This document shows positions 6,001 through 46,415 of a stretch of DNA of 64,000 bases, piece after piece; positions within the stretch are counted from its first letter, which is position 1; each line of letters begins with the position of its first letter. Under the pieces are notes generated by a model. The model was not told the origin of the DNA and did no database searches. It saw nothing but the letters and a program-made list of their open reading frames with translations. Location of the stretch: the IMG/VR virus record IMGVR_UViG_3300027736_001324, positions 62,001 through 126,000 of that record. One strand, given 5' to 3'. Both the position numbers and the translations under genes were made by a program.

Positions 6001-9000
6001 GCTGATGTAATAAATCTAGCAGCATGGACTGAAGTTTACAGATTGCCAACTACAGCTACATTTAACGGCAACCCAGTTGCGGTAACTAATGTACTTAACG
6101 GAGTTACTTATGCACATACAACTGGTTACACTGGATTTGTTGCAGTTGGTTTAGGACAAACACCGTCTGGTTCTAATTTAGTTAATGTAGCATTAATATA
6201 TACTAGCGTTGATGGAATTACTTGGAATCAAGTAACATTCAATGCTACAACATACGGGTTTAATGCAATCGCATCTAACGGACAAACAATTGCAGCAGTC
6301 GGTGATCATGGCATCATCTACACAAGTACCAATGCAATTACTTGGTTTGCACAATCATCTGGAACTGTTCGTAATCTAACTAACATCATTTGGGACAGTG
6401 TTAATAATGTATTTGTTGCGCTTGGTGAAAACGGTGTAATTTTAACTTCTGATATATTTGGCATTACATGGACTGCCCGAACATCAGGCACAACTGAAAC
6501 ACTAGAAAGCGTTGTTTGGAACAATGATGATAGTGAATATGTAGTAGTTGGTTTAAACAATACTGTATTGAGAAGTACCGACCTGACCACATGGACATCA
6601 ACATCTAATTTTGTAACTCCAGAAGCTGTGTACACCGTACAGGGGGATGCATTTACAGCAGGTTACGGTCCAGAAGAAATGGTACCAGGCATAGTGTCTG
6701 ATACGATTACGATGATTACTAATACTCGTCCTGGATCAAACTGGGATGAAACAATATATCAACATGTTGGATATGGTGTAGTTTCTTTAGAATTGACTCC
6801 AACCTCAGGAAATCAAGTTGAATATAGTTTTGTCAACGCAACAATTGTTCCAACTCAAGTTAGTGTATTTGTAATAGATTACGCTACTGGATTAAGCACC
6901 ACTTTATATGAAGGTATTGATTATTCAGTTGATTGGATTAATAAAATAGTAACATTAGATACTCCTATTAATTACATTACTCCGGGTACTGATACTTTAC
7001 GCATTGACGTATATGAAGTTGGTAATGGAGATCAATTAGTTAAAGCAAATACAGAAACTGATCCTATCAGATTAAATTCAACAACAGGCTTCCATGAAAT
7101 TTATGTTAATGCAAATTATACTGCTGGTATATATCAAGGATCAGGGGTAATTAGACCCACTACTGAACCATTAAAAGCAATTGCACTTTTAACTAACGGA
7201 ACATCTGATGCGATAACTTGTGATTCTGTAGAAAACTTTGTGTTGAATAGTCCAATAACATTTAGCGGAACAGTATTTGGTAATATTGTAGAAGATCAAG
7301 TTTATTATGTTAAATCTATTAGTGGTGCAACAAACAGAATTACTATATCATTGACTGTCAACGGTGATACTTTTGCATTGGCTGATGCCACAGGATCCAT
7401 GACTGCAATTATACAAGTGGGTACTGGTATTGTGTGGACTCCCCCTGCAATGTATCACAATGGATCTCCGTTGACATTGGGTACTACTAGTATCGTTACT
7501 AGAACAAAATCAACTACTAATACTATCACAACCAATTCAACCGGAACGATGGTACCAAATCAATCAATCGTATTCAGTAATACAATGTTTGGGGATGTAA
7601 TTGTACCACAACAAGTGTATTATGTAAAAACAGTATATGATGCAAATGAGTTTACTGTATCAGAAACTCAAGGTGGAGATACATTAGAATTATCTGATGC
7701 AACCGGCGGCGCAATATTCATTACCAATGATTATGCAATCGGATTAGCAGATAATGGTGTCACTGCATCAATTATGCTAGCAGCAGATTATGATGTTACT
7801 ATAGATTATCTAGCATATACTTTAATGGGTGAAACATTGCCTATACAGTATGGTTATACATTGCCAATAGTAGAAACATTTGTCGGTGATGCTGTTGGAA
7901 CAGCATCATTCACTTTGACTAACTATTTGGGAGGAACTAACCCAACAAATGCAATTGTGGAAATTAATGGGGTAAGACAGAATAATTCTGCATACACAAT
8001 AAATGATATTAATAATACAATATTATTTTATAGTCCACCATCTGATGGAGATGTTATTTCAGTAACCACATATAACTTAACTGACCGTCAATATTTTAAT
8101 ACACAATACAATATTACAAGTTCCGGAGCAGGTGTAGCAAGTATTACAATAAGCAATACTACTGCAACAGCAATACCGTTTGATTACAGTGTTCTTGCTG
8201 GAAGTTTTGTTATTGGACAACTTTATACTATACAATCACTTAACGATGATGCATATCCTACTCCCGGAGCAAATACAAATTTCACTTTAATTGGGGCCTC
8301 TTCAAATACAGTAGGCGTTACATTTACTGCAACCGGCCCCGGAACTGGAACTGGATCAGCGATAATTGCCGGCAATGGATTTGATGCTACACAACAAACT
8401 GTATTACAAACGGCCGGATCATTTGTTTTGACTAATGTTTATTCTATTGTAACATTAGGAACAACGACTAATACACAATGGAATACTATTGCAGGAACAT
8501 CCGGCGTAACTTACAGCGTTGGTAGTACTTTTACTTGTGCTAATATTGGTACAGGTTTGGGGAACGGAACGGCCTATGCTTACTCATCTGGCTTGTATAG
8601 TCAATCATTATATTATTTGACATTGGCTTCAGGTACTACAAGTTCATTGATAATTAATAGTTCTATTGTATTTGAAAATGTAATAGGTGGAATAGTTGCT
8701 GGACAAACATATTATATAACAGAAATATTAAATTCTACTGACTTTGTTATCTCAAGTCAAGTGGGAGGATTACCATACGAAGTTACCACTGACAGTGGAG
8801 CAATGACTAGTGTTGTTGGTGAGCTAACTGTTTCTAACATTGTTGGAATAGATAATTCTATCACTACTCCTGTTGCAATTACTGTTTCAGGAACTATAGC
8901 CGCGGATGATTCAGTAATTTGTAGCACTACAAGTAATTTAACTGTTGGACAAGATATAATATTTAAAGCAGCAATTATAGGAGTTACTGAAGGAATAGTA

Positions 9001-10800
9001 AACAGTTATCAATATCAAATTATTGATTTAGGTACTACTACTAATGCTGAATGGAATGACATTGCATTAACGTCCGGTGTTACATATGAAGTAGGTAGCA
9101 CGTTCACCGTGCTTGCAGCTTCAGCAGCAGCGGGAACCGGCACTGTGTTACTTACTAATTTAGGTGGTATCAGCACACTTGGTGAAGTTTATTTTGTTAG
9201 AGCATTATTAGATAGCACACATTTTACTATAGAAGATCAATATGGTAATATAATTGAACTTACTGATACCTCAGGTAATTCATTATATGCATACAGCGGA
9301 GGCTTAGTAGCAGTTAGAGTTATAACTGGAATTGATCACGGTTTAACAGAAAATTCATTAATTCGTATTGACGGTGTAGTTGGATCAACCCAGTTAAACA
9401 ACAATACATATTATGCTAGAATAATAAGTAATACTGAATTTGATTTGTATACCTATCCATACAATCCTGCATATGGAGCTATTAATTACCCGGTCGTTGC
9501 AATATCTGCATATATCTCAGGTGGATATGCATGGTTAGATCAATTGTTTACTATTGCTACTACTGTAACAATTGGAACAAATTCTACTAATAACAGAATT
9601 GCTGTACAAGACGGAACTAAATTAATACATGGAACTCCGGTATACTTTACTCAATTTGGCGCTACTCAAAATGAAGATATATTGGGTAATATTTTAGCAC
9701 AGCATGAATATTATGTGTATGAAATTACACCGGCAACAAGTGTAGATGATTTTGTAATAGGGTACCAGTATCAAATTTTAGAATTGGGTGATACTGACTG
9801 GAACTTTGTTGCAGGTACAGTAGACGTTGATTATGTTGTAGAGGATATAATTACAGTTGAGGATGTTGATTCAGGAACAACAGGCGTTGCAAGTAGTTTA
9901 CAAGAATTTACTATTAGCGAAACTCGCTATCCAAATGAATCAATTTTTGCAGTAACAACAGCTACAGGTGTAGTAAATGTTTCTCAATTCCAACAAATCA
10001 ATGTTGATAGATTGTGGGTAACTGTAAATGGTTTACGAGTTCCGGCGTCGTCATTGAGACTAAATGAATATAATAATTTAAGTATTTTGACAACTATTCA
10101 AACTGGCGATGTAGTTATTATAACTAGTATGATGCCAACAGCTACTCCAAATGAAGAAACTTATTTATTAAATGTAACTACAAGCAATCAGCCATCTGTA
10201 TATAGAGCAAATTCACAGACTAGAACTTGGTTAACTCACCCATTAGAATACACTGATACTTTGATTTATTTAAATGATGTAAGTCGTATAACCGATACTA
10301 TTGTTCAGGATGTAACGTGTCCAGTTGCTGTAGACGGGTTATATAATATTGGATTAACTTCTAATAAGAACGTAATATGTCATTTGACAGTTTATAACAA
10401 TACAACTTCTACCTTAGTGGACCCAGTAAATTATTCAACAATTGTTGTAGATACCGCTCCAATATTGCAAATTTCTGCTCAAGTTTCAGTTGGGGATTCA
10501 TTGACAATCACTTCAGTTGAAGGTAGATTATTATATGTCAATGGGGAGCAAATTGGATTCAGAGAATGTGATTTGACCAACAATACAGTCAGTGATTTGC
10601 AACGCGGAACAAACGGCACAGGTACACAGACTTATATTCCGTTATATTCTGAAGCATACGGATTGGTTCCAAATAATCGTATGACAGACGTACTATATTC
10701 TTCTGCGTGGAATTCTTATGTATACAATACAGTTGAGGGCGATCCGTTGCAGATTAGTGACACATTGGGAGCAGGTTTCTTAAGAACGGATAGAACTTAA
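1..10800 (+). CDS. Giant virion structural protein (baseplate/tail-associated), 5'-truncated by the window edge
   Basis: The frame is open from base 1, so the track start at 229 is internal. T/G/S/V-rich beta-strand composition; repeated 'FxGxxFGGIxxxxxYYV...FTIS' and 'AGSFVxGxxYTIxxxGxT...G.GTG' modules; beta-propeller-like 'S.DG.TW' repeats near 5.7-6.6 kb; lies upstream of tail-fibre genes. Confidence 0.75.
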   Translation, partial: TNAKDLDYGSQPYYGTALDFNDNRVTVGTPNFAPTTNANDTNGQVITYVSLSSEPDWAVFRSTSAIVDVNSLGPIQLFSASTNQTLENLDYFDPLQGKLLGAIQQNIDVISNVDPAGYNSPSYTQGNLVWGPEKLGMIWFNTNNTRFMNYHQNDVTYNSQWWGRVFPGSDVSVYSWVVSNVPPAQYPGPGVPFSPTDYSVQGVINAEGLVVPVYYFWARNTNTVFTRRDKTLADTTLQLYIANPQGTGISYFSPLLPNVFGLYNCFDYVNGNDTTLHIGYATANNDDVAHNQYSLIRANYADDFLPGVPGSGAAYQYHGAVGITEPTSLYNRMLDSMCGVDNFGAVVPNPLLPKLVQTGVLAKPRQGFFYDRFGALQNYLQYANEILAQYPITETRNAAFLSKTGTFYDTKNYWNYINWWATGYNNNTKSSLQVSIYADLSTLDVAAGTIVTVAANSAGNSETYIYNVDGTWTRIGLTNGTIEFSSYLWDYPSAKLGFGDNFFDTNLYDEYPSEETRNIVRALNEEIYTNELLIHRNKSLILLFEYIQSETVENQNYLPWLNKTSLMDVSHTIRELLPLEVFRSDNQDFLAGYINEVKPYHVVIKEFLFKYTKTDVFEGDITDFDIPSQFNTTVQQFISPELVYANPSGDNQFLPTDPIWQTAPYSQWFSNYGLSIGYRVENTVAGETNYPITKLASYVSLSSNSLYVDNVNGFPVTGSILIGTEEIAYSSIDLLTNQLLGLARGYNSTTIEQHIPGEQIYIDLPAVIVLNSGRGYTEPPRVTAYIDTTVYPAPRVVAQLEPIMSLDSVIGVKVLNPGEGYAVLPTIQIDPAFTITFNSTSVNVDNSTIEIEAPLLQTGDLLIYNIPAGSTKIGGLVDGQKYYVGVLETTPSTVIALYDTYFTLLNDHDRVPLTSQGSGTQTLKVGAVASCITSSIPTRENSITLRYDRTSYTSQVIEWEPSGYYGSFYAGSFNDSLRLSSSSISLEASSPPISSVLASAQGVGFSILDVENNQTLTWSSRTRDTIQTYDNTTLYPNAIRINPSTGGSSVDALLGSTLGFYVGMPVKFVGSIPAGSPIVSSTPIGVTPESTTIYYVKSLLKLPKIIDAGSFVFGKVYTIVSVGNTDFVAIGASANTVGVVFTATGTGSGTGTASDATLLEDTGFTISATVDTDGVPGATFSLTTATVGTAGLTLYVGELTNTAIMTVNYNGIRTVTGTSSTNNIITIPLNAIGENGTTGFYQGLPIFFTGNVFGGVVENDTYYVTTVIDLQNFTMSTINDPLVLTATATNASGYAITCNTTLGLSVNDPIIFTGTTFGGIVEGTIYYVRELFSGNSTFSISASVNGSAVVLTTDSGSCTVTSQVDTVVLTTSTGSMTLNMGLPVSPGQVNGQQFTLYKTSGEYTSVSGTVSNLIERNITATLATVNRVCLTTNSGGITNIYTNMDFDVASNIGGLTTSGGPYTVTGTGTTSITVTATFSNNRLRCTDTDILYEGMPIYFSGTSLGGVSLDEVYYVLDIVNSTDFTISESPAGSEFDTLGDSGSMTGTGEPYLTVADTLSDATGLVTLTQSVGTTPTFNVSYILGGYQAVVATAGTGYAETNIITILGTAIGGTTPTNNLSLQVSAVNSSGGILGTIASGAPAGATEQYYVKVYSETQLELYENSNLTVAVSGLNFPYTGITTTTATVATASNNRFTVGSSAGFNLNDSVVFTGTVFGGVTLGETYYILAKPTSTTVTISTSIGGTVFDITADDTGSMSMAKAGDFALLPEPFFFDASVVKYNNRLYQCIISNNDQDFIFGKWELLQAGNYNLNALDRIVGYYKPNKTNTEAWAQYINMPGDDLTQLVSGITYPNATYLGNPFAPADEFTLDTILTDRPFYATGLDLKAVIWNGTTYISAADTTSYTSLNVSANSVTWAITQLSNSTINVTDMIFNGLYYVMTCNNSATPVLTSTDGINWSTITSYTPYGLTATTIPLSLNSIVYQTSLPYVAVGNTILICADVINLAAWTEVYRLPTTATFNGNPVAVTNVLNGVTYAHTTGYTGFVAVGLGQTPSGSNLVNVALIYTSVDGITWNQVTFNATTYGFNAIASNGQTIAAVGDHGIIYTSTNAITWFAQSSGTVRNLTNIIWDSVNNVFVALGENGVILTSDIFGITWTARTSGTTETLESVVWNNDDSEYVVVGLNNTVLRSTDLTTWTSTSNFVTPEAVYTVQGDAFTAGYGPEEMVPGIVSDTITMITNTRPGSNWDETIYQHVGYGVVSLELTPTSGNQVEYSFVNATIVPTQVSVFVIDYATGLSTTLYEGIDYSVDWINKIVTLDTPINYITPGTDTLRIDVYEVGNGDQLVKANTETDPIRLNSTTGFHEIYVNANYTAGIYQGSGVIRPTTEPLKAIALLTNGTSDAITCDSVENFVLNSPITFSGTVFGNIVEDQVYYVKSISGATNRITISLTVNGDTFALADATGSMTAIIQVGTGIVWTPPAMYHNGSPLTLGTTSIVTRTKSTTNTITTNSTGTMVPNQSIVFSNTMFGDVIVPQQVYYVKTVYDANEFTVSETQGGDTLELSDATGGAIFITNDYAIGLADNGVTASIMLAADYDVTIDYLAYTLMGETLPIQYGYTLPIVETFVGDAVGTASFTLTNYLGGTNPTNAIVEINGVRQNNSAYTINDINNTILFYSPPSDGDVISVTTYNLTDRQYFNTQYNITSSGAGVASITISNTTATAIPFDYSVLAGSFVIGQLYTIQSLNDDAYPTPGANTNFTLIGASSNTVGVTFTATGPGTGTGSAIIAGNGFDATQQTVLQTAGSFVLTNVYSIVTLGTTTNTQWNTIAGTSGVTYSVGSTFTCANIGTGLGNGTAYAYSSGLYSQSLYYLTLASGTTSSLIINSSIVFENVIGGIVAGQTYYITEILNSTDFVISSQVGGLPYEVTTDSGAMTSVVGELTVSNIVGIDNSITTPVAITVSGTIAADDSVICSTTSNLTVGQDIIFKAAIIGVTEGIVNSYQYQIIDLGTTTNAEWNDIALTSGVTYEVGSTFTVLAASAAAGTGTVLLTNLGGISTLGEVYFVRALLDSTHFTIEDQYGNIIELTDTSGNSLYAYSGGLVAVRVITGIDHGLTENSLIRIDGVVGSTQLNNNTYYARIISNTEFDLYTYPYNPAYGAINYPVVAISAYISGGYAWLDQLFTIATTVTIGTNSTNNRIAVQDGTKLIHGTPVYFTQFGATQNEDILGNILAQHEYYVYEITPATSVDDFVIGYQYQILELGDTDWNFVAGTVDVDYVVEDIITVEDVDSGTTGVASSLQEFTISETRYPNESIFAVTTATGVVNVSQFQQINVDRLWVTVNGLRVPASSLRLNEYNNLSILTTIQTGDVVIITSMMPTATPNEETYLLNVTTSNQPSVYRANSQTRTWLTHPLEYTDTLIYLNDVSRITDTIVQDVTCPVAVDGLYNIGLTSNKNVICHLTVYNNTTSTLVDPVNYSTIVVDTAPILQISAQVSVGDSLTITSVEGRLLYVNGEQIGFRECDLTNNTVSDLQRGTNGTGTQTYIPLYSEAYGLVPNNRMTDVLYSSAWNSYVYNTVEGDPLQISDTLGAGFLRTDRT

Positions 10801-12879: not shown

Positions 12880-13818
12880 ATGAGTTACGCACAATACGGA
12901 ACAATCGCAGCATCAGATTATAACACCTTGGTGGGTGGAGATCCGGTCACAAGTTCCGGAACTTTAAATGCAGTCTGGGCAACAGGTGGAACTAATACTG
13001 GGTATGGTCAAACAGCAGAAGCAAATGTGGCGGCGGGTGATTCAGTTACTGCTACAAAATGGGCTAATCTTGTAAATAAAACTGCAAACTCCGCATCGCA
13101 TCAAGGAACATCAATTAGTTCAGTTACTGCACCTGCAGCGGGCGGCACAGTTACTTACTTGTCTGCAATACCAACAAATTTAACTACAATTTATACCAAT
13201 AGATTAAATGCCACAAGTCAAGGTACTACAACTGCTAATACTGCAACTTATGCTAGTACATGGCAAGCAGCATTAACTTTTACACATACTGTAACATTTG
13301 CTAATGCAAATGCTGCTAGGTATTTCTTTAATGCAGGCGGACAACTAAAAGTTACTTGCGCTCATGCAAATACCGCAACTTCTATCAATACATTATATAA
13401 CGGACTAGCATCTAATATTGGTACAGTTGTATTAAGTTCACCCGTTACTGGCTCAATAACTGTGAATAGTGTCTCATTCAACGGTATCACTAAAGTTGGT
13501 GGAGGTGGTAATGCTCCTACTATTAGTACTAATACAGGGTATTATGCACTGACTACTAGTAATGCAAATGTATTCACCCAATTAGCATCAACTGGCCCAT
13601 CAGGATACTTAAGTTCATTCATTCGTATAATCGCTGTAAGTAATGGCTCCCCGGGCGCTACTGTTACTATCTATACAGTTTGGGATGAAGTTCCAGATGG
13701 ATTAACTGTTGGAACAGGCTCTGCTACTACGGTAACTATTGTAGCACCTGAAACAACTTATTTACCTACAGCAAGTTGGGGAACTCCAACCGTATCCGGA
13801 ACAGTAACCGGCTCATAA
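12880..13818 (+). CDS. Virion structural protein (T/A/G/S-rich)
   Basis: Composition, 'ARYFFNAGG' motif, AAGGA RBS, position after the fibre gene. Confidence 0.5.
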   Translation: MSYAQYGTIAASDYNTLVGGDPVTSSGTLNAVWATGGTNTGYGQTAEANVAAGDSVTATKWANLVNKTANSASHQGTSISSVTAPAAGGTVTYLSAIPTNLTTIYTNRLNATSQGTTTANTATYASTWQAALTFTHTVTFANANAARYFFNAGGQLKVTCAHANTATSINTLYNGLASNIGTVVLSSPVTGSITVNSVSFNGITKVGGGGNAPTISTNTGYYALTTSNANVFTQLASTGPSGYLSSFIRIIAVSNGSPGATVTIYTVWDEVPDGLTVGTGSATTVTIVAPETTYLPTASWGTPTVSGTVTGS

Positions 13819-13830
13819 TTTTTCACATCA

Positions 13831-13878
13831 TCTTTGTATCCATCTAAATACTCATAGGAGTACTCATGGATACAAAGA
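13831..13878 (+). promoter_or_regulatory. Late promoter (TAAATA 13845-13850) inside a 13-bp perfect inverted repeat that masks the start codon
   Basis: tctttgtatccat (13831-13843) is the reverse complement of atggatacaaaga (13866-13878). Confidence 0.7.
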
Positions 13879-14171
13879 CATTAATAAGTGAAGCTAAAGC
13901 CCGCTTCAATCATAACTCAGCTAAAGCCTATCTAAAAGACAAATACGACAGTAAATTTATTGTTGCTGATCAAAATGGACTTTGGCGCGCCAATCTAGAA
14001 ACCATTAACTTCTTAAATTCTTCTACTGAAGAATGGGTAATACTAATAGACACCTTTGATAATCCAGTTAAAGTAAAACGAGTAGATTTGCTAAGTAAAC
14101 TTTCTGATACTTACAAAATCACAATGGAAGAATGGTATAACGAATGGGCTGAATTAGAGAAGAAAAGATGA
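13866..14171 (+). CDS. Hypothetical protein, first gene of the glycan cluster
   Basis: AGGAG RBS; ATGA overlap with the next gene. Confidence 0.7.
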   Translation: MDTKTLISEAKARFNHNSAKAYLKDKYDSKFIVADQNGLWRANLETINFLNSSTEEWVILIDTFDNPVKVKRVDLLSKLSDTYKITMEEWYNEWAELEKKR

Positions 14172-14974
14172 GTAGAGGCGTATTACTTTTTGCATTCAAT
14201 AGCCCAAAATATAACTACTACAAAATGGCAGTAGCAACTGCTAAACGAGTAAATCACTTTTTGGATCTACCTGTTACAATCGTAACAGATAATGATTCAT
14301 TGCCTGAACAACAAACATATACATTTGATAAGGTTATCATAGCTGATGCTGATAAAACCAATAAAAGAGATTGGGGGATATGGTTCAACAAAGGTAGATA
14401 TCGTGCATATGCATTAAGTCCATATGATGAAACTATATTGCTAGACACAGATTACATGGTCAACTCAGACAAATTATTAAAGACATTTGATTTACTAACA
14501 GACTTTTGCTGCCACGATACTACTAGTTTTATTATGTACCCAAACGCCGAACAAGAACTATTGAGTGGTCGTAGCTTTAACACATTGTGGGCTACTGTAA
14601 TTATGTTTAAGAAAACAAAAAGAGTAGAACAAATATTCAATTGCTTAGAAATGGTTCAAAAGAACTTTGAACATTACTCAAATATACACGGATTCATATC
14701 ATCTACCTTTCGCAACGATTACGGATTGACACTAGCAACAAGAATAGTTAACGGACATCTTACTACTAAAGAAGATGTAATCCCATGGAACTTATTACAT
14801 GTGGGAAAAAACACAGTAGTGTACAGAAACAATGATGATGAATTTAATAATGAATATACAGTAATGTTTGATAATTGGAACCGCGGAAAGATTCGTAAAG
14901 AATATATCACTATCAAAGATACTGATTTTCATGTTATGAACAAAGAAAACTTTATGGAGCTGATAAGTGAATAA
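14168..14974 (+). CDS. Glycosyltransferase-like protein (GT-A fold)
   Basis: 'GVLLFAFN' first strand; 'LSPYDETILLDTD' DxD motif. Confidence 0.6.
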   Translation: MSRGVLLFAFNSPKYNYYKMAVATAKRVNHFLDLPVTIVTDNDSLPEQQTYTFDKVIIADADKTNKRDWGIWFNKGRYRAYALSPYDETILLDTDYMVNSDKLLKTFDLLTDFCCHDTTSFIMYPNAEQELLSGRSFNTLWATVIMFKKTKRVEQIFNCLEMVQKNFEHYSNIHGFISSTFRNDYGLTLATRIVNGHLTTKEDVIPWNLLHVGKNTVVYRNNDDEFNNEYTVMFDNWNRGKIRKEYITIKDTDFHVMNKENFMELISE

Positions 14975-15707
14975 AGGTTTTGTAATAATGGCTCAGGATA
15001 CCGAGAAAACAAGCTATACTAAGTGTGCTGAAACATTAAAGAAAAGTATATTAAGAGTAATGCCAGACGCTAGCATCACTATTATAACTAGTGATATGTT
15101 GCCCTACGGTGATCTAGGTGGCTTTGCAAATGATTGGCAAGTATATGAAGCTAGTCCATATGATTATACAATCAAGTTAGAAGCGGATATGTATATCCCG
15201 CGCAACATAGACCATTGGTGGGATGTACTCAACCACAGAGATGTTGTAGTTTCAAGTACAATTAGAAATTTCATGCAGGAGATATCTGATGTAAGGGTGT
15301 ATCGCAGATTCATTGATGATAACAATTTGCCAGACGTATATAATGCAATCACTTATTTTAAGAAATCTGATGTGGCTAACCAATTCTTTAGTATAGTTAA
15401 AGACATATTTGAGAACTGGGAAGAATACAAAAAGATATTGAAATGCAACCAAACAGAATTAGTTACTACAGACTGGGTTTATTCTATTGCTTGTCATATT
15501 ATGGGAGTAGAAAAAACTACAATGCCTACGTTTAATGAGATGAGCATGGTGCATATGAAAGCATTTGTTAATAATAATGTGACTGAAAACTGGACTGATA
15601 CTTTTGTATATGAATGCTTGCCCGATCAGATTAGAGTACAGACAGTTCCGCAGCAATATCCATTTCACTATCATGTGAAGAACTTTTGTGATAAAATAGT
15701 AATATGA
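14967..15707 (+). CDS. Glycosyltransferase-like protein, paralog of the upstream gene
   Basis: 'KGFVIMAQ'; 'ASPYDYTIKLEAD' (ExD variant); 'HYH' near the C-terminus. Confidence 0.6.
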   Translation: MNKGFVIMAQDTEKTSYTKCAETLKKSILRVMPDASITIITSDMLPYGDLGGFANDWQVYEASPYDYTIKLEADMYIPRNIDHWWDVLNHRDVVVSSTIRNFMQEISDVRVYRRFIDDNNLPDVYNAITYFKKSDVANQFFSIVKDIFENWEEYKKILKCNQTELVTTDWVYSIACHIMGVEKTTMPTFNEMSMVHMKAFVNNNVTENWTDTFVYECLPDQIRVQTVPQQYPFHYHVKNFCDKIVI

Positions 15708-16039
15708 CCGAAGAAGATTATATTATTATTTGGGAAGCACCTAAATTAATACCGCCGGAGTATAGATTATATTATGATGACAAGGGTAAAGTAATTTGCT
15801 ATTCAGGAGATAAATCGGTAGAGGGCAAGTACATTGTTATTGATGCACAAACTTTTGTTGAAGCAAGACCTGATCTAGTGGTTATCGATGAAAAACTATC
15901 CCGTGCTAGACCAAACGCAATGGTAAGTAAATTGATGCCTGACGATAGTGAAGGGGTCACTTGTCATCCAGAAGATATGAGTATAATAGTTGATGATGCC
16001 AATCACATTAAATGGAAATTAAATATATATGAACTCTAA
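15704..16039 (+). CDS. Hypothetical protein
   Basis: Overlaps both neighbours, consistent with translational coupling. Confidence 0.65.
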   Translation: MTEEDYIIIWEAPKLIPPEYRLYYDDKGKVICYSGDKSVEGKYIVIDAQTFVEARPDLVVIDEKLSRARPNAMVSKLMPDDSEGVTCHPEDMSIIVDDANHIKWKLNIYEL

Positions 16040-16979
16040 TATCGTAGATGTGGCAGACTTGGATTGTATCTATCTAAGTTATGATGAGCCACAGAAAGAA
16101 GAATTCTGGCTTAAGATAAAGAACATGGTTCCCTGGGCAAAGCGTGTTGATAGTGTTAAAGGTAGTGATGCCGCACATAAAGCCGCAGCAGAAGAATCTG
16201 ATACCGAAAGATTTATTCTTATTGATGGTGATAATATGCCTAATGAGAATTTCTTTAATATACAATTAGACTTTACTGATAAAGGTTCTGAATATCAGCT
16301 AGCACAATATCGTTGGAAAGCTGTTAATAGTATTAACGGACTACGTTATGGCAATGGCGGCATGAGTAGCTGGACTAAAACTTATGTGCGTGAAATGAAA
16401 ACTCACGAAAATCAAAAAGACGGAGATGTAGCACGTATTGCTGATTTCTGTATGGATGGAAAAGATAATTTATATTGGGCAATGCATGATTGTTATTCTA
16501 CTACTTATCCTAATTATACTCCGTTTCAAGCGTGGCGTGCTGGATTCCGAGAAGGAGTAAAAATGGTTCTTGATAAAGGTGCAAGACCTGATATTGACAC
16601 TTTTAAAGAAACTGTTGCTAGTCGCAACTTAAACAATTTAACAATCTGGCATAACGTAGGTGCTGATGTTGAGAATGGCATGTGGGCTATCTATGGTGCA
16701 AGACTTGGAACATATATGACTATGTTAACTGAGTGGGATCACGCAAATGTTCAATGGTTTGATAACTATATAACACTTTGGGAAGAACAAGAATACAGAG
16801 ATCCAGAACGTGAAGCAACATTGATTGGTGAAGCATTAAATGATAAACTAGGATTGCCAATGTGTACATTGAGTAGCGAACAAAGCAAATTCTTTAAGCG
16901 ACACTATAATGCTGATAAGTACAATATCGGTCCATTGATAAGAGAGATGGATGTAATAAGAAAGATTGAGGGTTGGTAA
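16029..16979 (+). CDS. GT2-like glycosyltransferase-family protein
   Basis: 'IYLSYDEP', 'GSDAAHKAAA', 'FILIDGDN' DxD, 'AWRAGFREGVKM'. Confidence 0.6.
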   Translation: MNSNIVDVADLDCIYLSYDEPQKEEFWLKIKNMVPWAKRVDSVKGSDAAHKAAAEESDTERFILIDGDNMPNENFFNIQLDFTDKGSEYQLAQYRWKAVNSINGLRYGNGGMSSWTKTYVREMKTHENQKDGDVARIADFCMDGKDNLYWAMHDCYSTTYPNYTPFQAWRAGFREGVKMVLDKGARPDIDTFKETVASRNLNNLTIWHNVGADVENGMWAIYGARLGTYMTMLTEWDHANVQWFDNYITLWEEQEYRDPEREATLIGEALNDKLGLPMCTLSSEQSKFFKRHYNADKYNIGPLIREMDVIRKIEGW

Positions 16980-18550
16980 TGAAAAAGCTAGATGATGTAA
17001 TTTGGATAAAAAATAATTCCGGTGATATTGTTTCTAATAAAGAAAATGTAGAAACTGTAAAAAATCTATTAAATGACACTGGATGTGGATTTTGTTTAGC
17101 AAAGTTTACACAAGTCACTATGCATTTGGGTACAGGATTAGTACATTCATGTCATCATCCAAAAGCACATGTTGTGCCATTGGAAGAATTAGAAAATAAC
17201 CCGGCTGCATTGTTTAATACAAGCAAGTTAAAAAAAGCACGAAAACAAATGTTGTCCGGCGAGAAACCAAGTGAGTGTGATTATTGCTGGCGCGTAGAAG
17301 ATAGAAATAGTCCAAGTGACAGATACTTCAAGAGCCTTGAAAATTGGGCATTATCAAGTCATGATATGGTACTTGATAATGGACATGAGATTGATTACTA
17401 TCCTACTTACTTAGAGGTTGACTTTAGCAACGTATGTAATTTTAGCTGTATCTATTGCGGGCCTGAGTATAGTAGCATTTGGGTAGAAGATTTAAAAAGA
17501 AACGGTCCAGTTAAAGTATTAGATAATACAAGCAAGGTACAATGGGTACAGGGATGGCAAGACTTAGATTCTATTACATATAAGAACAGAGAACATAATC
17601 CATATGTTGAAGCATTTTGGAAATGGTTCCCCGATGCATATAAGAAACTTAAGTTTTACCGTATTACGGGTGGAGAGCCATTACTAAGCAAAGAAACATT
17701 TAGAAGTATTGATTGGCTCATTGAGAATCCAAATACTGAATTAGATTTCAGTATTAACAGTAACATGGGTGTACCAGATAAGTTATGGTATTCATTTTTA
17801 GATAAGATAAAAGTATTAGCAAATGGAAATTATGTTAAGAAATTTACCTTGTTTACAAGCGTTGATGCCTGGGGAGAGAAAGCAGAATATCTACGCCCTG
17901 GATTAGATTTTGAATTATTCAAAAAACGATATGAAGAAGTCCTACAAATTGGTGGTGTAAGATGCGTAATCATGTGTACATTTAATCTATTGAGTGTTAC
18001 TAGTATACAAAAGTTATTAGAATGGCAGTCTGAGTTACGAAGCAAATATAATGTTGACAGAGAGTTGTTACATTTAGAAACACAATTTGGTGTTAATCTA
18101 GGTGGAGAAATTTCTCATACTGAAAGAAACAAATTATCCGGTGAGCATTTTGCAATAGTTGGTATTGATATTCCGTATCTGCGTCATCCTCAATGTTTAG
18201 ATGCACATTTCTCGGATAAAAATTTGATTGAGAAATATTTAGTGCCGGCGATTAATTTCATGGCAAAAAACACAGGAAGTTCGCATTGGGGATTACATCA
18301 AGGGTATGAGTCATATGAAGTTGAAAAAATGAAAAGAAATGTATTTGATATAATTCATTTCAATTCAATACATGATGAAGAAAATCCAGTTGTAGTTGAA
18401 GGTAGGGCGAAGTTTTATGATTTTGTTAATGATATGGATAGGCGGCATGGTAAAAATTTCGTAGATGTCTTCCCAGAGTTTAAATCATTTTATGAAAAAT
18501 GTAGACAAAACAAAAACGACATATTAAAAGAGGAACATAAACTACCATGA
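16979..18550 (+). CDS. Radical SAM protein with N-terminal Cys-rich (twitch/SPASM-like) domain
   Basis: CNFSCIYC (CxxxCxxC), 'TGGEPL', N-terminal 'FCLAKF...HSCHH...ECDYCW'. Start taken at the ATG overlapping the upstream TAA. Confidence 0.85.
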   Translation: MKKLDDVIWIKNNSGDIVSNKENVETVKNLLNDTGCGFCLAKFTQVTMHLGTGLVHSCHHPKAHVVPLEELENNPAALFNTSKLKKARKQMLSGEKPSECDYCWRVEDRNSPSDRYFKSLENWALSSHDMVLDNGHEIDYYPTYLEVDFSNVCNFSCIYCGPEYSSIWVEDLKRNGPVKVLDNTSKVQWVQGWQDLDSITYKNREHNPYVEAFWKWFPDAYKKLKFYRITGGEPLLSKETFRSIDWLIENPNTELDFSINSNMGVPDKLWYSFLDKIKVLANGNYVKKFTLFTSVDAWGEKAEYLRPGLDFELFKKRYEEVLQIGGVRCVIMCTFNLLSVTSIQKLLEWQSELRSKYNVDRELLHLETQFGVNLGGEISHTERNKLSGEHFAIVGIDIPYLRHPQCLDAHFSDKNLIEKYLVPAINFMAKNTGSSHWGLHQGYESYEVEKMKRNVFDIIHFNSIHDEENPVVVEGRAKFYDFVNDMDRRHGKNFVDVFPEFKSFYEKCRQNKNDILKEEHKLP

Positions 18551-19323
18551 GAGTAGCATTATGTATTAGTGGTCAGCCTAGAACATGGGAAAAATGCTAT
18601 CAAAATTGGATAGATAGTATTCTTCCCGGCGCAGAGAAAGACGTTTTTTTTCATTTATGGGATTACAATTCATTACCTAGTATAATTAATACTATCCCGG
18701 GCGCACCGACAAACTATAATAAAAAAATATCTGAGGATGAGAAAAATCTAATTGTGGATACATTAAAGCCAAAGAAGCATAAATTTGATAATAAGGAAAT
18801 TCCAAATCGTAGTGATGATCCTAGTTTTATTAATGAATTTGTTAAAACTCCTTTGGGATGGTGGTGCAGAGGACAATATTATAGTTTATGGTATGCTGCT
18901 CAATTAAAACGACAATATGAATTAGAAAATAACTTTGATTATGATGTAGTATTCAGATTGAGAACTGATTTGATTTTTACAGAACCAGTTATATTACCTG
19001 AAAAAGTTGAATATAATTCTATATATTCTACAAATAATGGATGGATGGAAAATGTTGGAACTTTTATGATAGGTGATACTTTTTATTTTGCTGATAGTTT
19101 TACCTACGATCAAATATCTCAATTTATACATGGATTAGATTTTATCGACACATTTAATGTAGTTGATTCACATATAACTTTTCACCCACCTGAAGTTGCG
19201 TTTTATCCTTTTATTAAATCACTTGGAATAAAAAACATAAATTCACCGCAGCATTTTAAAATAGCAAGAACACAAGAATATCTTGACATTAAGAAAGAAT
19301 TAGGTTCGTATGAAATCATATAA
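18547..19323 (+). CDS. Putative glycosyltransferase, 'A(V/L)CxSGxxR' family, paralog 1
   Basis: MRVALCISGQPR...FFHLW...YDVVFRLRTD. Confidence 0.6.
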   Translation: MRVALCISGQPRTWEKCYQNWIDSILPGAEKDVFFHLWDYNSLPSIINTIPGAPTNYNKKISEDEKNLIVDTLKPKKHKFDNKEIPNRSDDPSFINEFVKTPLGWWCRGQYYSLWYAAQLKRQYELENNFDYDVVFRLRTDLIFTEPVILPEKVEYNSIYSTNNGWMENVGTFMIGDTFYFADSFTYDQISQFIHGLDFIDTFNVVDSHITFHPPEVAFYPFIKSLGIKNINSPQHFKIARTQEYLDIKKELGSYEII

Positions 19324-20062
19324 TATTGCTGTTTGTTTTAGTGGTCAAATTAGGACCGGGGTTTATGCTGCACCAAATATAAAAAGATTTATAGGTGATT
19401 TATGGGACAATTGTGATTTTTTTATACACACGTGGAATGTTTCTAATGAAAAGCCTACTCCTAAACAAGCTAAAGATGGAAATATGTTTGGTGATGCGCA
19501 GGAAATAGATTTTGAAACACTTAATAAAATTTATAATTTTAAAAAAATAAACATTACCCCGAGAATTCTATTGGACATGGGACTATGGCTGTCTTGGCTA
19601 CTAAGTGTACATTTAAAACAACAACATGAAATAGAAAATAATAAAAAATATGATTATGTTGTGAAGTTAAGACCTGATATGATTTATCGCAACTCATTAA
19701 CGCTAGATGATATGATTAAAAATACTTCATCTAAATCGGTTTCTGTAATGGAAACTTTTATATACGACGGTGATCAAATTACCGATGATTCATTGTATAT
19801 TGCTGATTCAACAACTATGGATCTATTTGTAAATTTTGTAAATGAATTACCCCATCTAACTCCTCACAAGACACCCCATCATGCTTTATATAATTATGCA
19901 ATAGAACACGGTATCATCATTAATGATTTAAAATGCGGATATTTTTCTGGTAACTACACTATATTAAGACAACCCTGTATATCGTATTGTACGTTGACTG
20001 AATTTGAAAAATGTGAAAAAATGGATAAGTTAATATATTATCCTGGAATGGCTAACAGATAA
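19310..20062 (+). CDS. Putative glycosyltransferase, same family, paralog 2
   Basis: IAVCFSGQIR...FIHTW...YDYVVKLRPD. Confidence 0.6.
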   Translation: MKSYNIAVCFSGQIRTGVYAAPNIKRFIGDLWDNCDFFIHTWNVSNEKPTPKQAKDGNMFGDAQEIDFETLNKIYNFKKINITPRILLDMGLWLSWLLSVHLKQQHEIENNKKYDYVVKLRPDMIYRNSLTLDDMIKNTSSKSVSVMETFIYDGDQITDDSLYIADSTTMDLFVNFVNELPHLTPHKTPHHALYNYAIEHGIIINDLKCGYFSGNYTILRQPCISYCTLTEFEKCEKMDKLIYYPGMANR

Positions 20063-21036
20063 TGAAAATTGCTGTTTGTTTTAGCGGAGAACCAAGAACC
20101 TGGAAACATACCGCCGCCGCAATTAAATATTTTTTTAGTAGCGATGTACATGATTATAAATTTTTTGGACATGCATGGAATAGCAGTTATTTTAATAAAG
20201 AACGTCAATCTGCTATGAACTCTGTTATGAATTCTTTTAAATCATCCACTGTATCCACTGCAACACCGGAACAGTTATTATATAAAAATATTTTAATAAA
20301 TAAATTTAAAAATCGTAATGTACAGACAATAAGTAATTGGCAAGAGCAGTATGAGAACAAAACCCTAGCAGACAATTTAATTGATACTTTTGGAATGACT
20401 GATGTGTTAGTTGAAGATAAATTGGTTGTTACTGAAGCTATGTCAAAAGATGAACTCATTGATCCCAACCTGAGGATTAACATTCCTAGAGCCACTATGG
20501 CTAATATGCGAAAACCGACCGGATGGGCGTATCTATCTTATACTAAGATGAGGGCTAATGCGTTAAAAACTAAATATGAATTAGCAAACGAAATGCAATT
20601 TGATGTAGTAGTAAGTGCTAGGTATGATGTATGTTACCCTCCTGAAGCAAAATTTGATCATTTATTGAACTATCACGGGAAACTTCTCCCTATTGCAGTA
20701 TACGGCGAAACTAATTATTATCCCAACGAATTCTTTTTGCCGCATATAAATGAGTTATTGTATTTTGGAAATAGCAGAGTTATGAACATAGTTGACGATT
20801 TTTATCGTTATTATGCCTCAGGAAAATTTTGGGAAATGACAAATGAACCGTTTACTGACAGTTCATTGAAATTCTGTGGATATGGTCCTAATTTGTATCG
20901 TTGGCTTACTATGAAAAACATATTAATGGTTAGTAAATTTAACCCATATGGTGTTTTTAGAAAAACAGCGGAACATTTAACATGGCCCCAAGACTGGGAT
21001 AAAATCCTTAAGGCTAACTCTAATTTGTTTACATAA
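20062..21036 (+). CDS. Putative glycosyltransferase, same family, paralog 3
   Basis: MKIAVCFSGEPR...FGHAW...FDVVVSARYD. Confidence 0.6.
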   Translation: MKIAVCFSGEPRTWKHTAAAIKYFFSSDVHDYKFFGHAWNSSYFNKERQSAMNSVMNSFKSSTVSTATPEQLLYKNILINKFKNRNVQTISNWQEQYENKTLADNLIDTFGMTDVLVEDKLVVTEAMSKDELIDPNLRINIPRATMANMRKPTGWAYLSYTKMRANALKTKYELANEMQFDVVVSARYDVCYPPEAKFDHLLNYHGKLLPIAVYGETNYYPNEFFLPHINELLYFGNSRVMNIVDDFYRYYASGKFWEMTNEPFTDSSLKFCGYGPNLYRWLTMKNILMVSKFNPYGVFRKTAEHLTWPQDWDKILKANSNLFT

Positions 21037-22739: not shown

Positions 22740-24041
22740 TTATTTGAACTTGACATTCATCGAACAGGCGCCTGCATTTGACCAACAACCGCCGGTGTAG
22801 GCAACAAACGCTCCAGAAGTAGTGGGTTTAATTTGTGCCGAATATGGCTTTAACGTAACGCTAGGGTTATAAAAAGTATGTATAACACTGGCAGTAACTG
22901 TATCAGTTGAGTATTTAATAATAGCCCATTCTACTCCTTCTATTGGTACTCCTGCCCACCCGTCAGTAACGTAGAAATAAAAATACCCATTATCGTATAC
23001 AACATCTAGCGCGGTGCTATATCTAGTGCCATGAGAAGTTGATAATGGCATGATAAATTTTTTAATAGTTGACCAATCAAAACCTCCTTTTTTGTCCCCC
23101 TTGACCCAAATCGTAAATGACTCTTTAGACAAAATCAAATCCAATCGACCATCAATTGGAATTACCATGAGGTTCCACATTATATTTAAATCTGGCATTG
23201 AAGAAGATTTTGGAATTATTTTGGTATCTTGTTTAAATGTACCGTCGCCATTCCCCAACAAAACTGCCACACTATCAACTCCGCTATTAGAATCGGGGAA
23301 AATAGTATTACCAAAAACATTAATAGTTACTATATCAATATTTCCGTCACCGTTTATATCGGCTGCTGCTGCTTGGTGAGCGTATATGTTAAATGGAACT
23401 TCTACTCGTTTGTACGTATTGTCTTTTTGGCTTAAAAAAATAATTTGATTACTACTCTTATAATTTATTAATTCGGACATAGAAAATCCAAAATTATAGA
23501 AATCATTGTCAACCCCACTACATGAAATATAAACATCAGGTTTACCGTCATTGTTGAAATCCGCGGTCATAGAATAACTTGCTGATATACAAGTTGCCCT
23601 ATCTGAGTTCGTCTTTAATAATTCGTTTGTTCTATCTCGCCACTTTCCATTAATATCCTGACTAAGAAAATAAGCCACCCCTGGCGCATCAGGTAAATTT
23701 TCAATACCGTACTTATTGGTAGCCCGCATAGATGAAACGAAAGCTGAATATTTCCCTTCTTGAAAAAAATCCCCAAATGTAACAGACCTTTCATTTGAAT
23801 CTAATTCGTCGGAATATACTTTTGGTATTCCTAAATTACGTACTCCGGGCATTTGAGTTTGATCAAAATTAATTGAGTTTTTATTTTCGTAAGAAGTACC
23901 AAATACAGCAAACGGTACTATTTTGGCAGGTATATTAGCTGGCGCAGTAGTATTACTAATAGAACCGCCCCCGCCCCCACCCCCACACGCAACTAATGCA
24001 AAAATGGAATATGCTATTGCTGTATACTTGATATAGTTCAT
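22740..24041 (-). CDS. Lipoprotein with FG-GAP/VCBS-like Ca-binding repeats
   Basis: Lipobox 'LVA-C' followed by poly-Gly; 'ADFNNDGKPD', 'ADINGDGNID', 'GNGDGTF'. Confidence 0.8.
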   Translation of the reverse strand: MNYIKYTAIAYSIFALVACGGGGGGGSISNTTAPANIPAKIVPFAVFGTSYENKNSINFDQTQMPGVRNLGIPKVYSDELDSNERSVTFGDFFQEGKYSAFVSSMRATNKYGIENLPDAPGVAYFLSQDINGKWRDRTNELLKTNSDRATCISASYSMTADFNNDGKPDVYISCSGVDNDFYNFGFSMSELINYKSSNQIIFLSQKDNTYKRVEVPFNIYAHQAAAADINGDGNIDIVTINVFGNTIFPDSNSGVDSVAVLLGNGDGTFKQDTKIIPKSSSMPDLNIMWNLMVIPIDGRLDLILSKESFTIWVKGDKKGGFDWSTIKKFIMPLSTSHGTRYSTALDVVYDNGYFYFYVTDGWAGVPIEGVEWAIIKYSTDTVTASVIHTFYNPSVTLKPYSAQIKPTTSGAFVAYTGGCWSNAGACSMNVKFK

Positions 24042-46008: not shown

Positions 46009-46037
46009 AATTGCTCAAAAATTAAGCAATTTTGAGG

Positions 46038-46066
46038 TTGACATTAAATGGTTTTGGGCTTATAAT
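46038..46066 (+). promoter_or_regulatory. Early sigma70-type promoter (copy 1)
   Basis: TTGACA-17-TATAAT. Confidence 0.85.
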
Positions 46067-46099
46067 AGAGGCTTAGACAGTCAACAAACGGAGTTAATT

Positions 46100-46357: not shown

Positions 46358-46382
46358 CATTAAATGGATTTGGGTATATAAT
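46354..46382 (+). promoter_or_regulatory. Early sigma70-type promoter (copy 2)
   Basis: TTGACA-17-TATAAT; near-duplicate of 46038-46081. Confidence 0.85.
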
Positions 46383-46415
46383 ATAGACTTAGACAGTTAG
46401 ATAAAGGACTAGAAA

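What the first reader, a model, noticed from the sequence alone, without database searches (positions are those of the whole stretch)
13831..13878. 13-bp perfect inverted repeat masking the first start codon of the glycan cluster, with a late promoter in the loop
Seen: the left arm 13831-13843 is complementary to the first 13 nt of the CDS, and TAAATA plus the AGGAG RBS lie between the arms. Established: T4 uses this layout (e.g. gene e, soc, I-TevI) so that read-through RNA is translationally silent while RNA from the internal late promoter lacks the left arm. Inference: this is a gate on a long chain of translationally coupled glycan genes.
Basis: partly seen in the sequence, partly recalled or inferred. 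Interest (0 to 1): 0.6.

Follow-up and report, generated by a model that had tools for sequence, protein, structure and literature searches.

The report
Start-codon-masking hairpin with internal late promoter
An uncultured freshwater jumbo phage carries a conserved RNA hairpin that hides the start of the first gene of a sugar-transferase operon, with a T4-type late promoter inside its loop; this is the trick phage T4 uses for its lysozyme gene, so it is a well-supported new example of a known mechanism, not a new one.

Summary
Bases 13831-13843 are a perfect 13-nt complement of the first 13 nt of ORF 13866-14171. The 22-nt loop holds CTAAATA and an AGGAG ribosome-binding site. Such a repeat is expected 0.18 times in this 264-kb genome.

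The phage is a distant T4 relative and encodes a gp55-type late sigma factor. TAAATA is its late-promoter core: it occurs in 59 of 152 upstream regions against 8.7 expected, mostly 15-24 nt before start codons.

Hairpin, promoter and spacing are kept in about 78 of 80 related metagenomic loci. Some stem positions show compensatory changes, and an arm-swap test supports pairing (p 0.005). RNA that includes the left arm folds with the AUG and ribosome-binding site paired. RNA starting at the predicted start site, 13856, does not.

A second, unrelated gene in the same genome has the same design.

Two caveats apply. No transcript ends could be mapped. The upstream genes are themselves late baseplate and fibre genes, so the hairpin more likely insulates the operon from late read-through than acts as an early/late clock.

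Verdict: a real feature and a new member of a known kind.

The parts
12880..13818 (+). Upstream 312-aa gene (fibre-like, no family hit). Its transcripts are the presumed read-through RNA.
   Evidence: ORF. No Pfam or PHROG hit. A homologue sits upstream in 78 of 80 related loci with a 45-52 nt spacer. No terminator-like site lies between it and 13866.
13831..13843 (+). Left (5') arm of the outer stem, non-coding. It is complementary to the AUG and codons 2-5.
   Evidence: Conserved and co-varying with the coding arm in relatives.
13844..13850 (+). CTAAATA, the predicted gp55-type late promoter (-12 to -6) in the loop.
   Evidence: TAAATA is present in 81 of 81 loci, 15-16 nt before the ATG in 54 of 65 distinct loci. 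Genome-wide it is enriched upstream of genes: TAAATA 59 vs 8.7 expected, CTAAATA 14 vs 1.75. The distance peak is at 15-24 nt. CTAAATA is the reported late consensus of phage Aeh1 (PMC1524935).
13849..13853 (+). Left arm of the inner stem (UACUC), which pairs with the Shine-Dalgarno region.
   Evidence: Minimum-free-energy and centroid structures. The pairs at columns 35-37 / 44-46 are 94% paired across relatives. However, TAAATACT is also common at other late promoters.
13856..13856 (+). Predicted late transcription start (A, 6 nt after TAAATA).
   Evidence: Inference from the T4 rule that the TATAAATA box spans -13 to -6 (PMC1524935). Not mapped.
13856..13862 (+). Shine-Dalgarno AGGAG (13856-13860). 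The right arm of the inner stem, GAGUA, is 13858-13862.
   Evidence: TAGGAG is at least 90% conserved in alignment A1.
13866..13878 (+). Right (3') arm of the outer stem: AUG plus the next 10 nt of the coding sequence.
   Evidence: The AUG is 4% unpaired in long RNA and 54% in short RNA.
13866..14171 (+). Gated first gene: 101-aa helix-beta-helix protein conserved in at least 89 viral contigs.
   Evidence: AlphaFold2 pLDDT 88. Only weak prefoldin-like and DUF4376-like fold matches.
14168..21036 (+). Eight further genes joined head-to-tail (overlaps of 1-14 nt), most without a Shine-Dalgarno sequence. Includes a sugar-transferase-like gene, a radical SAM gene and capsular-polysaccharide-like paralogues.
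   Evidence: Junctions. Family hits. Atlas look-alikes. None of the 19 + strand TAAATA between 13866 and 32600 lies 10-30 nt before a gene start.

Best explanation
This is a cis-acting RNA gate of the T4 gene-e type.

Transcripts that enter from the upstream fibre gene contain the left arm. They fold into a 13-bp outer stem that pairs the AUG and codons 2-5, plus a 5-bp inner stem that pairs the Shine-Dalgarno sequence. Ribosomes therefore cannot start on the 101-aa gene.

A gp55-type late promoter (CTAAATA) lies in the loop. RNA polymerase carrying the phage late sigma would start about 6 nt downstream, at roughly 13856. That RNA lacks both left arms and has an open ribosome-binding site.

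The next eight genes overlap head-to-tail and mostly lack their own ribosome-binding sites. Opening or closing this one site would therefore set translation of the whole sugar-transferase chain.

Shown: the sequence, the predicted folds, promoter-motif statistics, the presence of the late sigma, and conservation with covariation.

Inferred: the start site, translational silencing, coupling down the chain, and the biological purpose. Because the upstream unit is itself late, the likeliest purpose is insulation of the enzyme operon from fibre-operon read-through, not timing.
For: Structure:
- Perfect 13-bp inverted repeat.
- Long RNA folds at -34.3 kcal/mol, z -4.97, with both stems in the minimum-free-energy and centroid structures.
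- Short RNA from 13856 folds at -8.4 kcal/mol, z +0.68, with no structure on the ribosome-binding site.

Promoter:
- A gp55 homologue (phrog_12791, E 3e-73) sits next to a gp47 homologue.
- TAAATA is enriched about 7-fold and GATAAATA about 22-fold upstream of genes. Motif-to-ATG distance peaks at 15-24 nt; here it is 15.
- The motif is invariant in 81 of 81 loci.

Conservation:
- In 56 of 65 distinct relatives (55-87% protein identity) the AUG is less than 20% unpaired in long RNA. It is on average 58% unpaired in short RNA.
- 76% of cells are paired, against 30-50% when partners are slid. No shuffle of 500 reaches the observed covariation score.
- The Thr codon third base and its partner occur as U-A, A-U and G-C, and each state needs at least 6 changes on the tree.
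- In-silico arm swaps between 30 disjoint nearest relatives: own combination more stable in 18, swapped in 5, tie in 7 (sign test p 0.005, Wilcoxon 5e-4).
- RNAalifold on 23 gap-free distinct rows recovers the 12-bp outer and 3-bp inner stems.

Precedent and generality:
- T4 gene e has the same layout.
- A second gene in this genome, a 265-aa head-tail-adaptor-like gene between MazG-like and dNMP-kinase-like genes, has GATAAATA inside a conserved, co-varying hairpin that hides its ribosome-binding site.

Chain: overlaps of 1-14 nt with weak or absent Shine-Dalgarno sequences, and no other suitably placed TAAATA in the cluster.
Against: - No RNA data exist. The phage is known only from freshwater metagenomes and no RNA run holds it. 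The start site, the read-through and the silencing are all predictions.
- The flanks of this promoter score low against the genome's other predicted late promoters (rank 2 of 38).
- The + strand block upstream (genome 40.5-75.8 kb) is baseplate, virion and fibre genes with their own TAAATA motifs. None of the 11 strong early promoters lies upstream. The T4 rationale of silencing early read-through therefore does not obviously apply.
- A paired AUG in ensemble folds is not rare: 11% of the genome's genes are below 5% unpaired.
- The tree-based independent-pairs sign test was under-powered and not significant.
- RNAalifold on the full 81-row alignment returned no structure.
- The G-U versus A-C asymmetry test could not separate RNA selection from AT mutation bias.
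- A gp45 clamp homologue was not found with T4 gp45 as query. The contig is only about 69% complete.
Confidence: 0.68

Rival explanations
1. The hairpin is mainly an RNA end or processing element. It could be a 3' stabiliser or boundary for the upstream fibre mRNA, or an RNase III-type cleavage site (13 + 5 bp interrupted stem) that separates fibre and enzyme messages. Overlap with the start codon would then be secondary.
For: - Both long and short RNAs are probably late, so timing is not needed.
- The stem is very stable.
- A conserved TAATTTTT and a weak 4-6 bp stem lie just upstream at the end of the fibre gene.
Against: - The 3' arm is anchored on the AUG in nearly all relatives: the pair at columns 24-58 is kept in 60 of 62 rows with letters.
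- The inner stem covers the Shine-Dalgarno sequence.
- The promoter is invariant in the loop at a fixed distance from the ATG.
- An unrelated second locus repeats the mask-plus-promoter logic with a different sequence.
- No U-tract follows the stem.
Confidence: 0.12
2. The inverted repeat acts as DNA. It would be a symmetric operator flanking the late promoter and bound by a dimeric regulator, as I-TevI represses its own late promoter.
For: The two arms bracket the promoter symmetrically. T4 precedent exists for a protein operator over a late promoter (PMC2988022).
Against: - The arms change sequence while keeping complementarity: three Watson-Crick pair types occur at one position, and swapped arms fold worse. 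A protein site would conserve sequence.
- Stem length and register drift among relatives.
- The half-sites are 35 bp apart centre to centre.
- No candidate regulator is known.
Confidence: 0.05
3. The hairpin is real, but the loop motif is not an active promoter. The gene would then be opened by something else, such as a trans factor, a helicase, temperature or ribosome traffic, and TAAATA is conserved for another reason.
For: - The flank score is low (rank 2 of 38; 160 of 327 genomic TAAATA score at least as high).
- No start site has been mapped.
- The motif has only 6-7 informative bases.
Against: - It is invariant in 81 of 81 loci while neighbouring loop and leader positions vary.
- The motif-to-ATG distance is held at 15-16 nt, inside the genome-wide peak.
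- In L036 and L037 the motif moved to exactly 5 nt before the ATG as the Shine-Dalgarno sequence was lost. That fits a start on the AUG.
- The layout is identical to T4 gene e.
Confidence: 0.1

Closest known systems
T4 gene e (lysozyme) translational control by an mRNA hairpin with late promoters inside or next to the 5' arm
   Same: - The Shine-Dalgarno sequence and AUG are paired in transcripts that enter from upstream.
- A gp55-type box sits in the loop a fixed short distance before the ATG: T4 TATAAATA-13 nt-ATG, here CTAAATA-15 nt-ATG.
- The late RNA starts at the Shine-Dalgarno sequence and lacks the 5' arm.
   Different: - Here the outer stem is longer and perfect (13 bp) and pairs the AUG and codons 2-5, while a separate inner stem takes the Shine-Dalgarno sequence.
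- The promoter is the CTAAATA variant.
- The upstream unit is late, not early.
- The gated gene heads a chain of nine overlapping genes instead of being a single gene.
- Nothing has been tested experimentally.
T4 soc, gene 49, I-TevI/II/III, segB and Aeh1 mobE hairpin-plus-late-promoter gates
   Same: Same class: a stable helix sequesters the ribosome-binding site on long RNA, and a late promoter is placed so that late RNA cannot form it (PMC3014915 and PMC2988022). The second locus in this genome, a late structural gene between nucleotide-metabolism genes, matches the soc situation of a late gene in an early region.
   Different: Those are single genes, mostly mobile endonucleases or accessory genes, embedded in early or middle units of T-even phages. 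This one is in an uncultured jumbo phage whose terminase is at most 50% identical to its nearest cultured relatives such as PA5oct, Atu_ph07 and GAP32. It sits at a fibre-to-enzyme operon boundary.
Late promoters of T4-related phages (TATAAATA; NATAAATA; CTAAATA in Aeh1)
   Same: A TAAATA core, no -35 element, a position just upstream of late genes, and a diverged gp55 homologue.
   Different: The strict TATAAATA octamer is under-represented here: 11 on the + strand against 28 expected, plus 6 on the - strand. Positions -13/-12 are mostly G/A and A/C. The gp55 homologue is 303 aa against 185 aa in T4.

Membership tests
T4-type hairpin / late-promoter translational gate (e, soc, 49, I-TevI class) | A stable helix sequesters the Shine-Dalgarno sequence and/or the AUG in transcripts that start upstream. 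| tested here: met
   Predicted only. The 13-bp and 5-bp stems appear in the minimum-free-energy and centroid structures, z -4.97. The AUG is 4% unpaired. The structure is conserved in 56 of 65 distinct relatives.
T4-type hairpin / late-promoter translational gate (e, soc, 49, I-TevI class) | A gp55-type late promoter is placed so that the late transcript lacks the 5' arm. | tested here: inconclusive
   The motif, its position and its conservation all fit, and the predicted start at 13856 lies downstream of both left arms. No start site is mapped and the flank score is low.
T4-type hairpin / late-promoter translational gate (e, soc, 49, I-TevI class) | The phage encodes the gp55 late sigma factor. 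| tested here: met
   T4 gp55 hits genome 39557-39829(-) at E 1.2e-5. The 303-aa ORF matches phrog_12791 at E 3e-73 and phrog_234 at E 3e-21. No gp45 was found with the T4 query on this incomplete contig.
T4-type hairpin / late-promoter translational gate (e, soc, 49, I-TevI class) | The long, silent transcripts come from early or middle promoters, giving temporal gating. | tested here: not met
   The upstream + strand block is baseplate, virion and fibre genes with TAAATA motifs. All 11 consensus early promoters lie elsewhere. Unknown middle promoters cannot be excluded. The second locus in the genome does fit this feature.
T4-type hairpin / late-promoter translational gate (e, soc, 49, I-TevI class) | Translation is measurably lower from long RNA than from short RNA. 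| not testable with these tools
   Needs reporters, toeprinting or ribosome profiling.
Intrinsic (Rho-independent) terminator | A G+C-rich stem with a short loop, followed directly by a U-tract. | tested here: not met
   The loop is 22 nt, the stem is AT-rich, and CATTAATAAG follows the stem. The scan does not call it.
Any curated RNA family (Rfam 15) | A covariance-model match. | tested here: not met
   No match at E up to 1 in 13600-14100 on either strand.

The most novel reading that the evidence does not exclude
Inside a purely late module the hairpin may work as an operon insulator, not as a clock. By blocking initiation on fibre-operon read-through RNA it would leave about 7 kb or more of coupled genes untranslated. 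That RNA would then be exposed to Rho-dependent polarity and decay. The sugar-transferase chain would thus be expressed only from its own gp55 promoter, at a level independent of the heavily transcribed structural genes.

This would be a clade-wide rule in these freshwater jumbo phages. It would include variants (L036, L037) in which the late RNA is predicted to be leaderless.
Probability: 0.35. Interest if true: 0.6.

Novelty: new member of a known kind. Interest (0 to 1): 0.45.

Why it matters
It extends a classic T4 post-transcriptional device to a distant, uncultured clade of freshwater jumbo phages. The comparative support is unusually good: 80 related loci plus a second independent instance in the same genome.

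It also yields a working late-promoter definition for this clade, (G/A)(A/C)TAAATA about 15-24 nt before start codons. That helps annotate timing classes in metagenomic jumbo phages.

If the insulator reading is right, one RNA stem can decide the output of a long translationally coupled enzyme operon placed behind structural genes. That is relevant to how phages dose virion-modifying or glycan-modifying enzymes.

Tried and rejected
- Megablast of the locus and tblastn of the 101-aa protein against cultured phages: no match. The neighbouring 268-aa protein hit only Ralstonia phage RsoM2USA at 27%.
- T4 gp45 as query on the genome: nothing. This is uninformative on a contig that is about 69% complete.
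- Public RNA runs: none hold the locus.
- treekit independent-pairs sign tests on single base pairs: too few informative pairs, not significant. Replaced by the arm-swap test.
- RNAalifold on the full 81-row MAFFT alignment, which has gaps and 4-6 mis-registered rows: empty structure. A gap-free subset gave the expected stems.
- G-U versus A-C asymmetry as a test of strand-specific RNA selection: C-to-T (24%) and G-to-A (21%) are equally common, so AT bias explains it. The test is not informative.
- A position-weight matrix of promoter flanks carries little information. This promoter ranks low, and the matrix cannot discriminate.
- Sigma-70 and terminator consensus scan: promoter-like hits equal the shuffle expectation, and no terminator lies between 12880 and 13866.
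- Rfam: no hit.
- Chance, terminator, DNA operator and processing-site readings were considered (see rivals).
- Fold search of the 101-aa protein: only weak prefoldin-like and DUF4376-like similarity, so its function is left open.

Full report
**Observation**

The window is part of a 263,709-bp, 37% G+C viral contig from freshwater metagenomes (G000:62001-126000).

At 13831-13843 the sequence TCTTTGTATCCAT is the exact reverse complement of 13866-13878, ATGGATACAAAGA. The right arm is the first 13 nt of ORF 13866-14171 (101 aa). The 22-nt loop reads CTAAATACTCATAGGAGTACTC. It therefore holds CTAAATA (13844-13850) and AGGAG (13856-13860), 5 nt before the ATG.

Only two perfect inverted repeats of at least 13 bp with a 3-40 nt loop exist in the whole genome. 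The expectation from 60 dinucleotide-Markov simulations is 0.18. Among 277 gene starts this one has the third most stable -45..+25 fold: -20.9 kcal/mol against a mean of -8.2 and sd of 4.3.

**What the genome is**

The large terminase is at most 50% identical to those of PA5oct, Atu_ph07, GAP32 and other jumbo members of the extended T4 superfamily. No cultured phage matches the locus.

The genome encodes a 303-aa homologue of the T4 late sigma gp55 (phrog_12791, E 3e-73) next to a gp47/SbcD homologue. T4 gp45 found nothing, but the contig is only about 69% complete.

**Promoters of this phage**

The strict T4 octamer TATAAATA is under-represented: 11 copies on the + strand against 28 expected, plus 6 on the - strand. 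The core TAAATA is strongly enriched in the non-coding stretches upstream of genes:

| Motif | Upstream regions with it (of 152) | Expected |
|---|---|---|
| TAAATA | 59 | 8.7 |
| GATAAATA | 20 | 0.9 |
| CTAAATA | 14 | 1.75 |

The distance from motif end to start codon peaks at 15-24 nt. At the finding it is 15 nt.

The literature places the T4 box at -13 to -6. It also reports poor conservation of -13 in T4 relatives and a CTAAATA consensus in Aeromonas phage Aeh1 (PMC1524935 and PMC2988020). Applying that rule puts the start at A13856, the first base of AGGAG.

The flanks of this particular motif score low against the other predicted late promoters (rank 2 of 38), so it may be weak.

Early promoters of this phage are unmistakable and different. 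There are eleven copies of TTGACA-N17-TATAAT with a conserved TTTGGG spacer, all on the + strand, at genome 108.0-108.4, 128.5-129.6, 244.6-245.0 and 261.9-262.7 kb.

**Folding**

RNA 13781-13930 folds at -34.3 kcal/mol (z -4.97; none of 200 shuffles folds as well). The 13-bp outer stem and a 5-bp inner stem, UACUC 13849-13853 with GAGUA 13858-13862, appear in both the minimum-free-energy and centroid structures. The AUG and the Shine-Dalgarno sequence are thus both paired.

RNA starting at 13856 folds at -8.4 kcal/mol (z +0.68), with nothing on the initiation region.

As a positive control, T4 gene e read from NC_000866 shows the same anatomy. A TATAAATA lies in the loop 13 nt before the ATG, and the stem covers AGGAGGT.

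**Relatives**

The 101-aa protein has at least 89 relatives in IMG/VR. Eighty loci at 55-87% identity were fetched. Main findings:

- **Synteny.** In 78 of 80 loci the upstream gene is a homologue of the 312-aa protein, with a 45-52 nt spacer in 76 and 36-37 nt in L036 and L037.
- **Promoter.** TAAATA is present in 81 of 81 loci, 15-16 nt before the ATG in 54 of 65 distinct sequences.
- **Masking.** In 56 of 65 distinct sequences the AUG is less than 20% unpaired in the -60..+40 RNA. It is 58% unpaired on average in RNA from the predicted start.
- **Pairing on the alignment.** 76% of cells pair, against 30-50% when partners are slid by 1-3 columns. No shuffle of 500 reaches the observed covariation score.
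- **Compensatory changes.** The third base of the Thr codon (ACA/ACT/ACC) and its non-coding partner occur as U-A (20), A-U (9) and G-C (9) among distinct rows. Each state needs at least 6 changes on a gene tree.
- **Arm-swap test.** Among 30 disjoint nearest-relative pairs with different arms, each leader with its own coding start folds more stably than with its partner's in 18 pairs, less stably in 5, and equally in 7 (sign test p 0.005, Wilcoxon 5e-4).
- **RNAalifold.** On 23 gap-free distinct rows it recovers a 12-bp outer and 3-bp inner stem (-15.35 kcal/mol).

Weaker or negative results:

- Single-pair independent-contrast tests were under-powered.
- RNAalifold on the full gapped alignment gave nothing.
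- A wobble-asymmetry test was uninformative because of AT bias.
- A paired AUG in ensemble folds occurs in about 11% of this genome's genes. Stability and conservation, not pairing alone, make this site special.

The only lineage without the hairpin (L060, L061) is also the only one with a different upstream gene.

**A second instance**

At genome ~158,575-158,614, outside the window, GATAAATA sits in the upper part of a 14-bp hairpin whose 3' arm covers the ribosome-binding site of a 265-aa head-tail-adaptor-like gene. That gene lies between MazG-like and dNMP-kinase-like genes.

The hairpin is kept, with multi-base compensatory variants, in 32 distinct related sequences. This is the T4 soc situation of a late gene inside a nucleotide-metabolism region. 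It shows that the device is a general tool of this phage clade.

**Context and purpose**

Downstream of the gated gene, nine junctions from 13866 to 21036 overlap by 1-14 nt, and most downstream starts have weak or no Shine-Dalgarno sequences. No other TAAATA lies 10-30 nt before a gene start anywhere between 13866 and 32600.

Gene content of the cluster:

- The second gene looks like a nucleotide-diphospho-sugar transferase.
- Later genes include a radical SAM enzyme, five paralogues resembling capsular-polysaccharide or DUF7796 proteins, a C-methyltransferase, a nucleotidyltransferase-kinase, an aldolase-like protein and a carbamoyltransferase.
- "Glycan cluster" is therefore a reasonable label.
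- The first gene itself is a small helix-beta-helix protein with only weak prefoldin-like and DUF4376-like similarity. It could be a fibre-associated chaperone.

Upstream, the whole + strand block from genome 40.5 kb encodes virion and baseplate proteins: hub/lysozyme, gp25-like and gp6-like wedge proteins, a 6,597-aa ORF, and fibre-like proteins. Several carry TAAATA motifs. No early promoter and no terminator lie before 13831.

The read-through RNA is therefore most likely itself late. The mechanical model is well supported: long RNA closed, promoter-in-loop RNA open. The T4 rationale of keeping a late gene silent early is not supported for this site.

The most economical purpose is insulation. 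The enzyme chain would be translated only from its own promoter and not from abundant fibre-operon transcripts. Untranslated read-through RNA might then also be prone to Rho polarity. That last step is inference.

**Rivals**

- An RNA end or processing element.
- A DNA operator.
- A real hairpin with an inactive loop motif.

Each is less consistent with four facts: the 3' arm is anchored on the AUG, the promoter and its spacing are invariant, complementarity is maintained while sequence is not, and the design recurs at a second locus. None is excluded without RNA data.

**Novelty and score**

This is a new, well-documented member of a known kind of regulatory device, found in an uncultured jumbo-phage clade. 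It has a twist in context: a late-late boundary and control of a long coupled operon.

- Confidence in the mechanism: about 0.68.
- Interest: 0.45.

Noticed in passing
window 1-10800 (genome 53007-72800): One uninterrupted ORF of 6,597 aa (19.8 kb) lies between baseplate-wedge-like genes and the fibre-like genes. Its last 3,523 aa have no Pfam hit.
   Followed up: partly
genome ~158,575-158,614 (outside the window; locus L084:1576-1615): A second promoter-in-hairpin gate. GATAAATA sits inside a 14-bp stem that hides the ribosome-binding site of a 265-aa head-tail-adaptor-like gene flanked by MazG-like and dNMP-kinase-like genes. It is conserved with compensatory changes in 32 distinct relatives.
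   Followed up: yes
window ~46030-46090 and ~46330-46400 (genome 108073, 108371); nine more copies elsewhere in the genome: A family of near-identical strong early promoters, TTGACAtTAAATGGnTTTGGGTATATAAT, often followed by CTTAGACAGT. All are on the + strand and mark the early regions.
   Followed up: partly
L036:2955-3017 and L037:2955-3017: In two relatives the Shine-Dalgarno sequence is gone and TAAATA lies exactly 5 nt before the ATG, inside a 15-17 bp hairpin. By the -13..-6 rule the late RNA would start on the A of the AUG, giving a predicted leaderless variant of the gate.
   Followed up: partly
L060 and L061, about 70 nt before position 3001: This is the only lineage with a different upstream gene, and it is also the only one lacking the hairpin (AUG 94% unpaired). 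TAAATA and AGGAG are retained.
   Followed up: partly
window 13800-13824: A weak 4-6 bp stem at the very end of the 312-aa gene is followed by the stop codon and a conserved TAATTTTT in most relatives. It may be a leaky, non-canonical terminator. The scan does not call it.
   Followed up: no
window 24401-24432: A perfect 12-bp inverted repeat, ATTTAAAATTGA / TCAATTTTAAAT, with an 8-nt loop lies inside or near the start of the 24054-24905 gene.
   Followed up: no
window 13866-14171: The gated 101-aa protein folds confidently (pLDDT 88) as long helix, four short strands, long helix. Fold matches are weak: prefoldin beta-like (TM about 0.48) and phage DUF4376-like. It sits directly after a fibre-like gene, so it may be a chaperone and not a glycan enzyme.
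   Followed up: partly
window 22740-24041 (- strand): A single minus-strand gene for an FG-GAP repeat protein interrupts the otherwise + strand sugar-enzyme cluster.
   Followed up: no
window 13788-13811: A tandem 12-nt direct repeat, AACCGTATCCGG / AACAGTAACCGG, lies at the C-terminus of the 312-aa gene.
   Followed up: no
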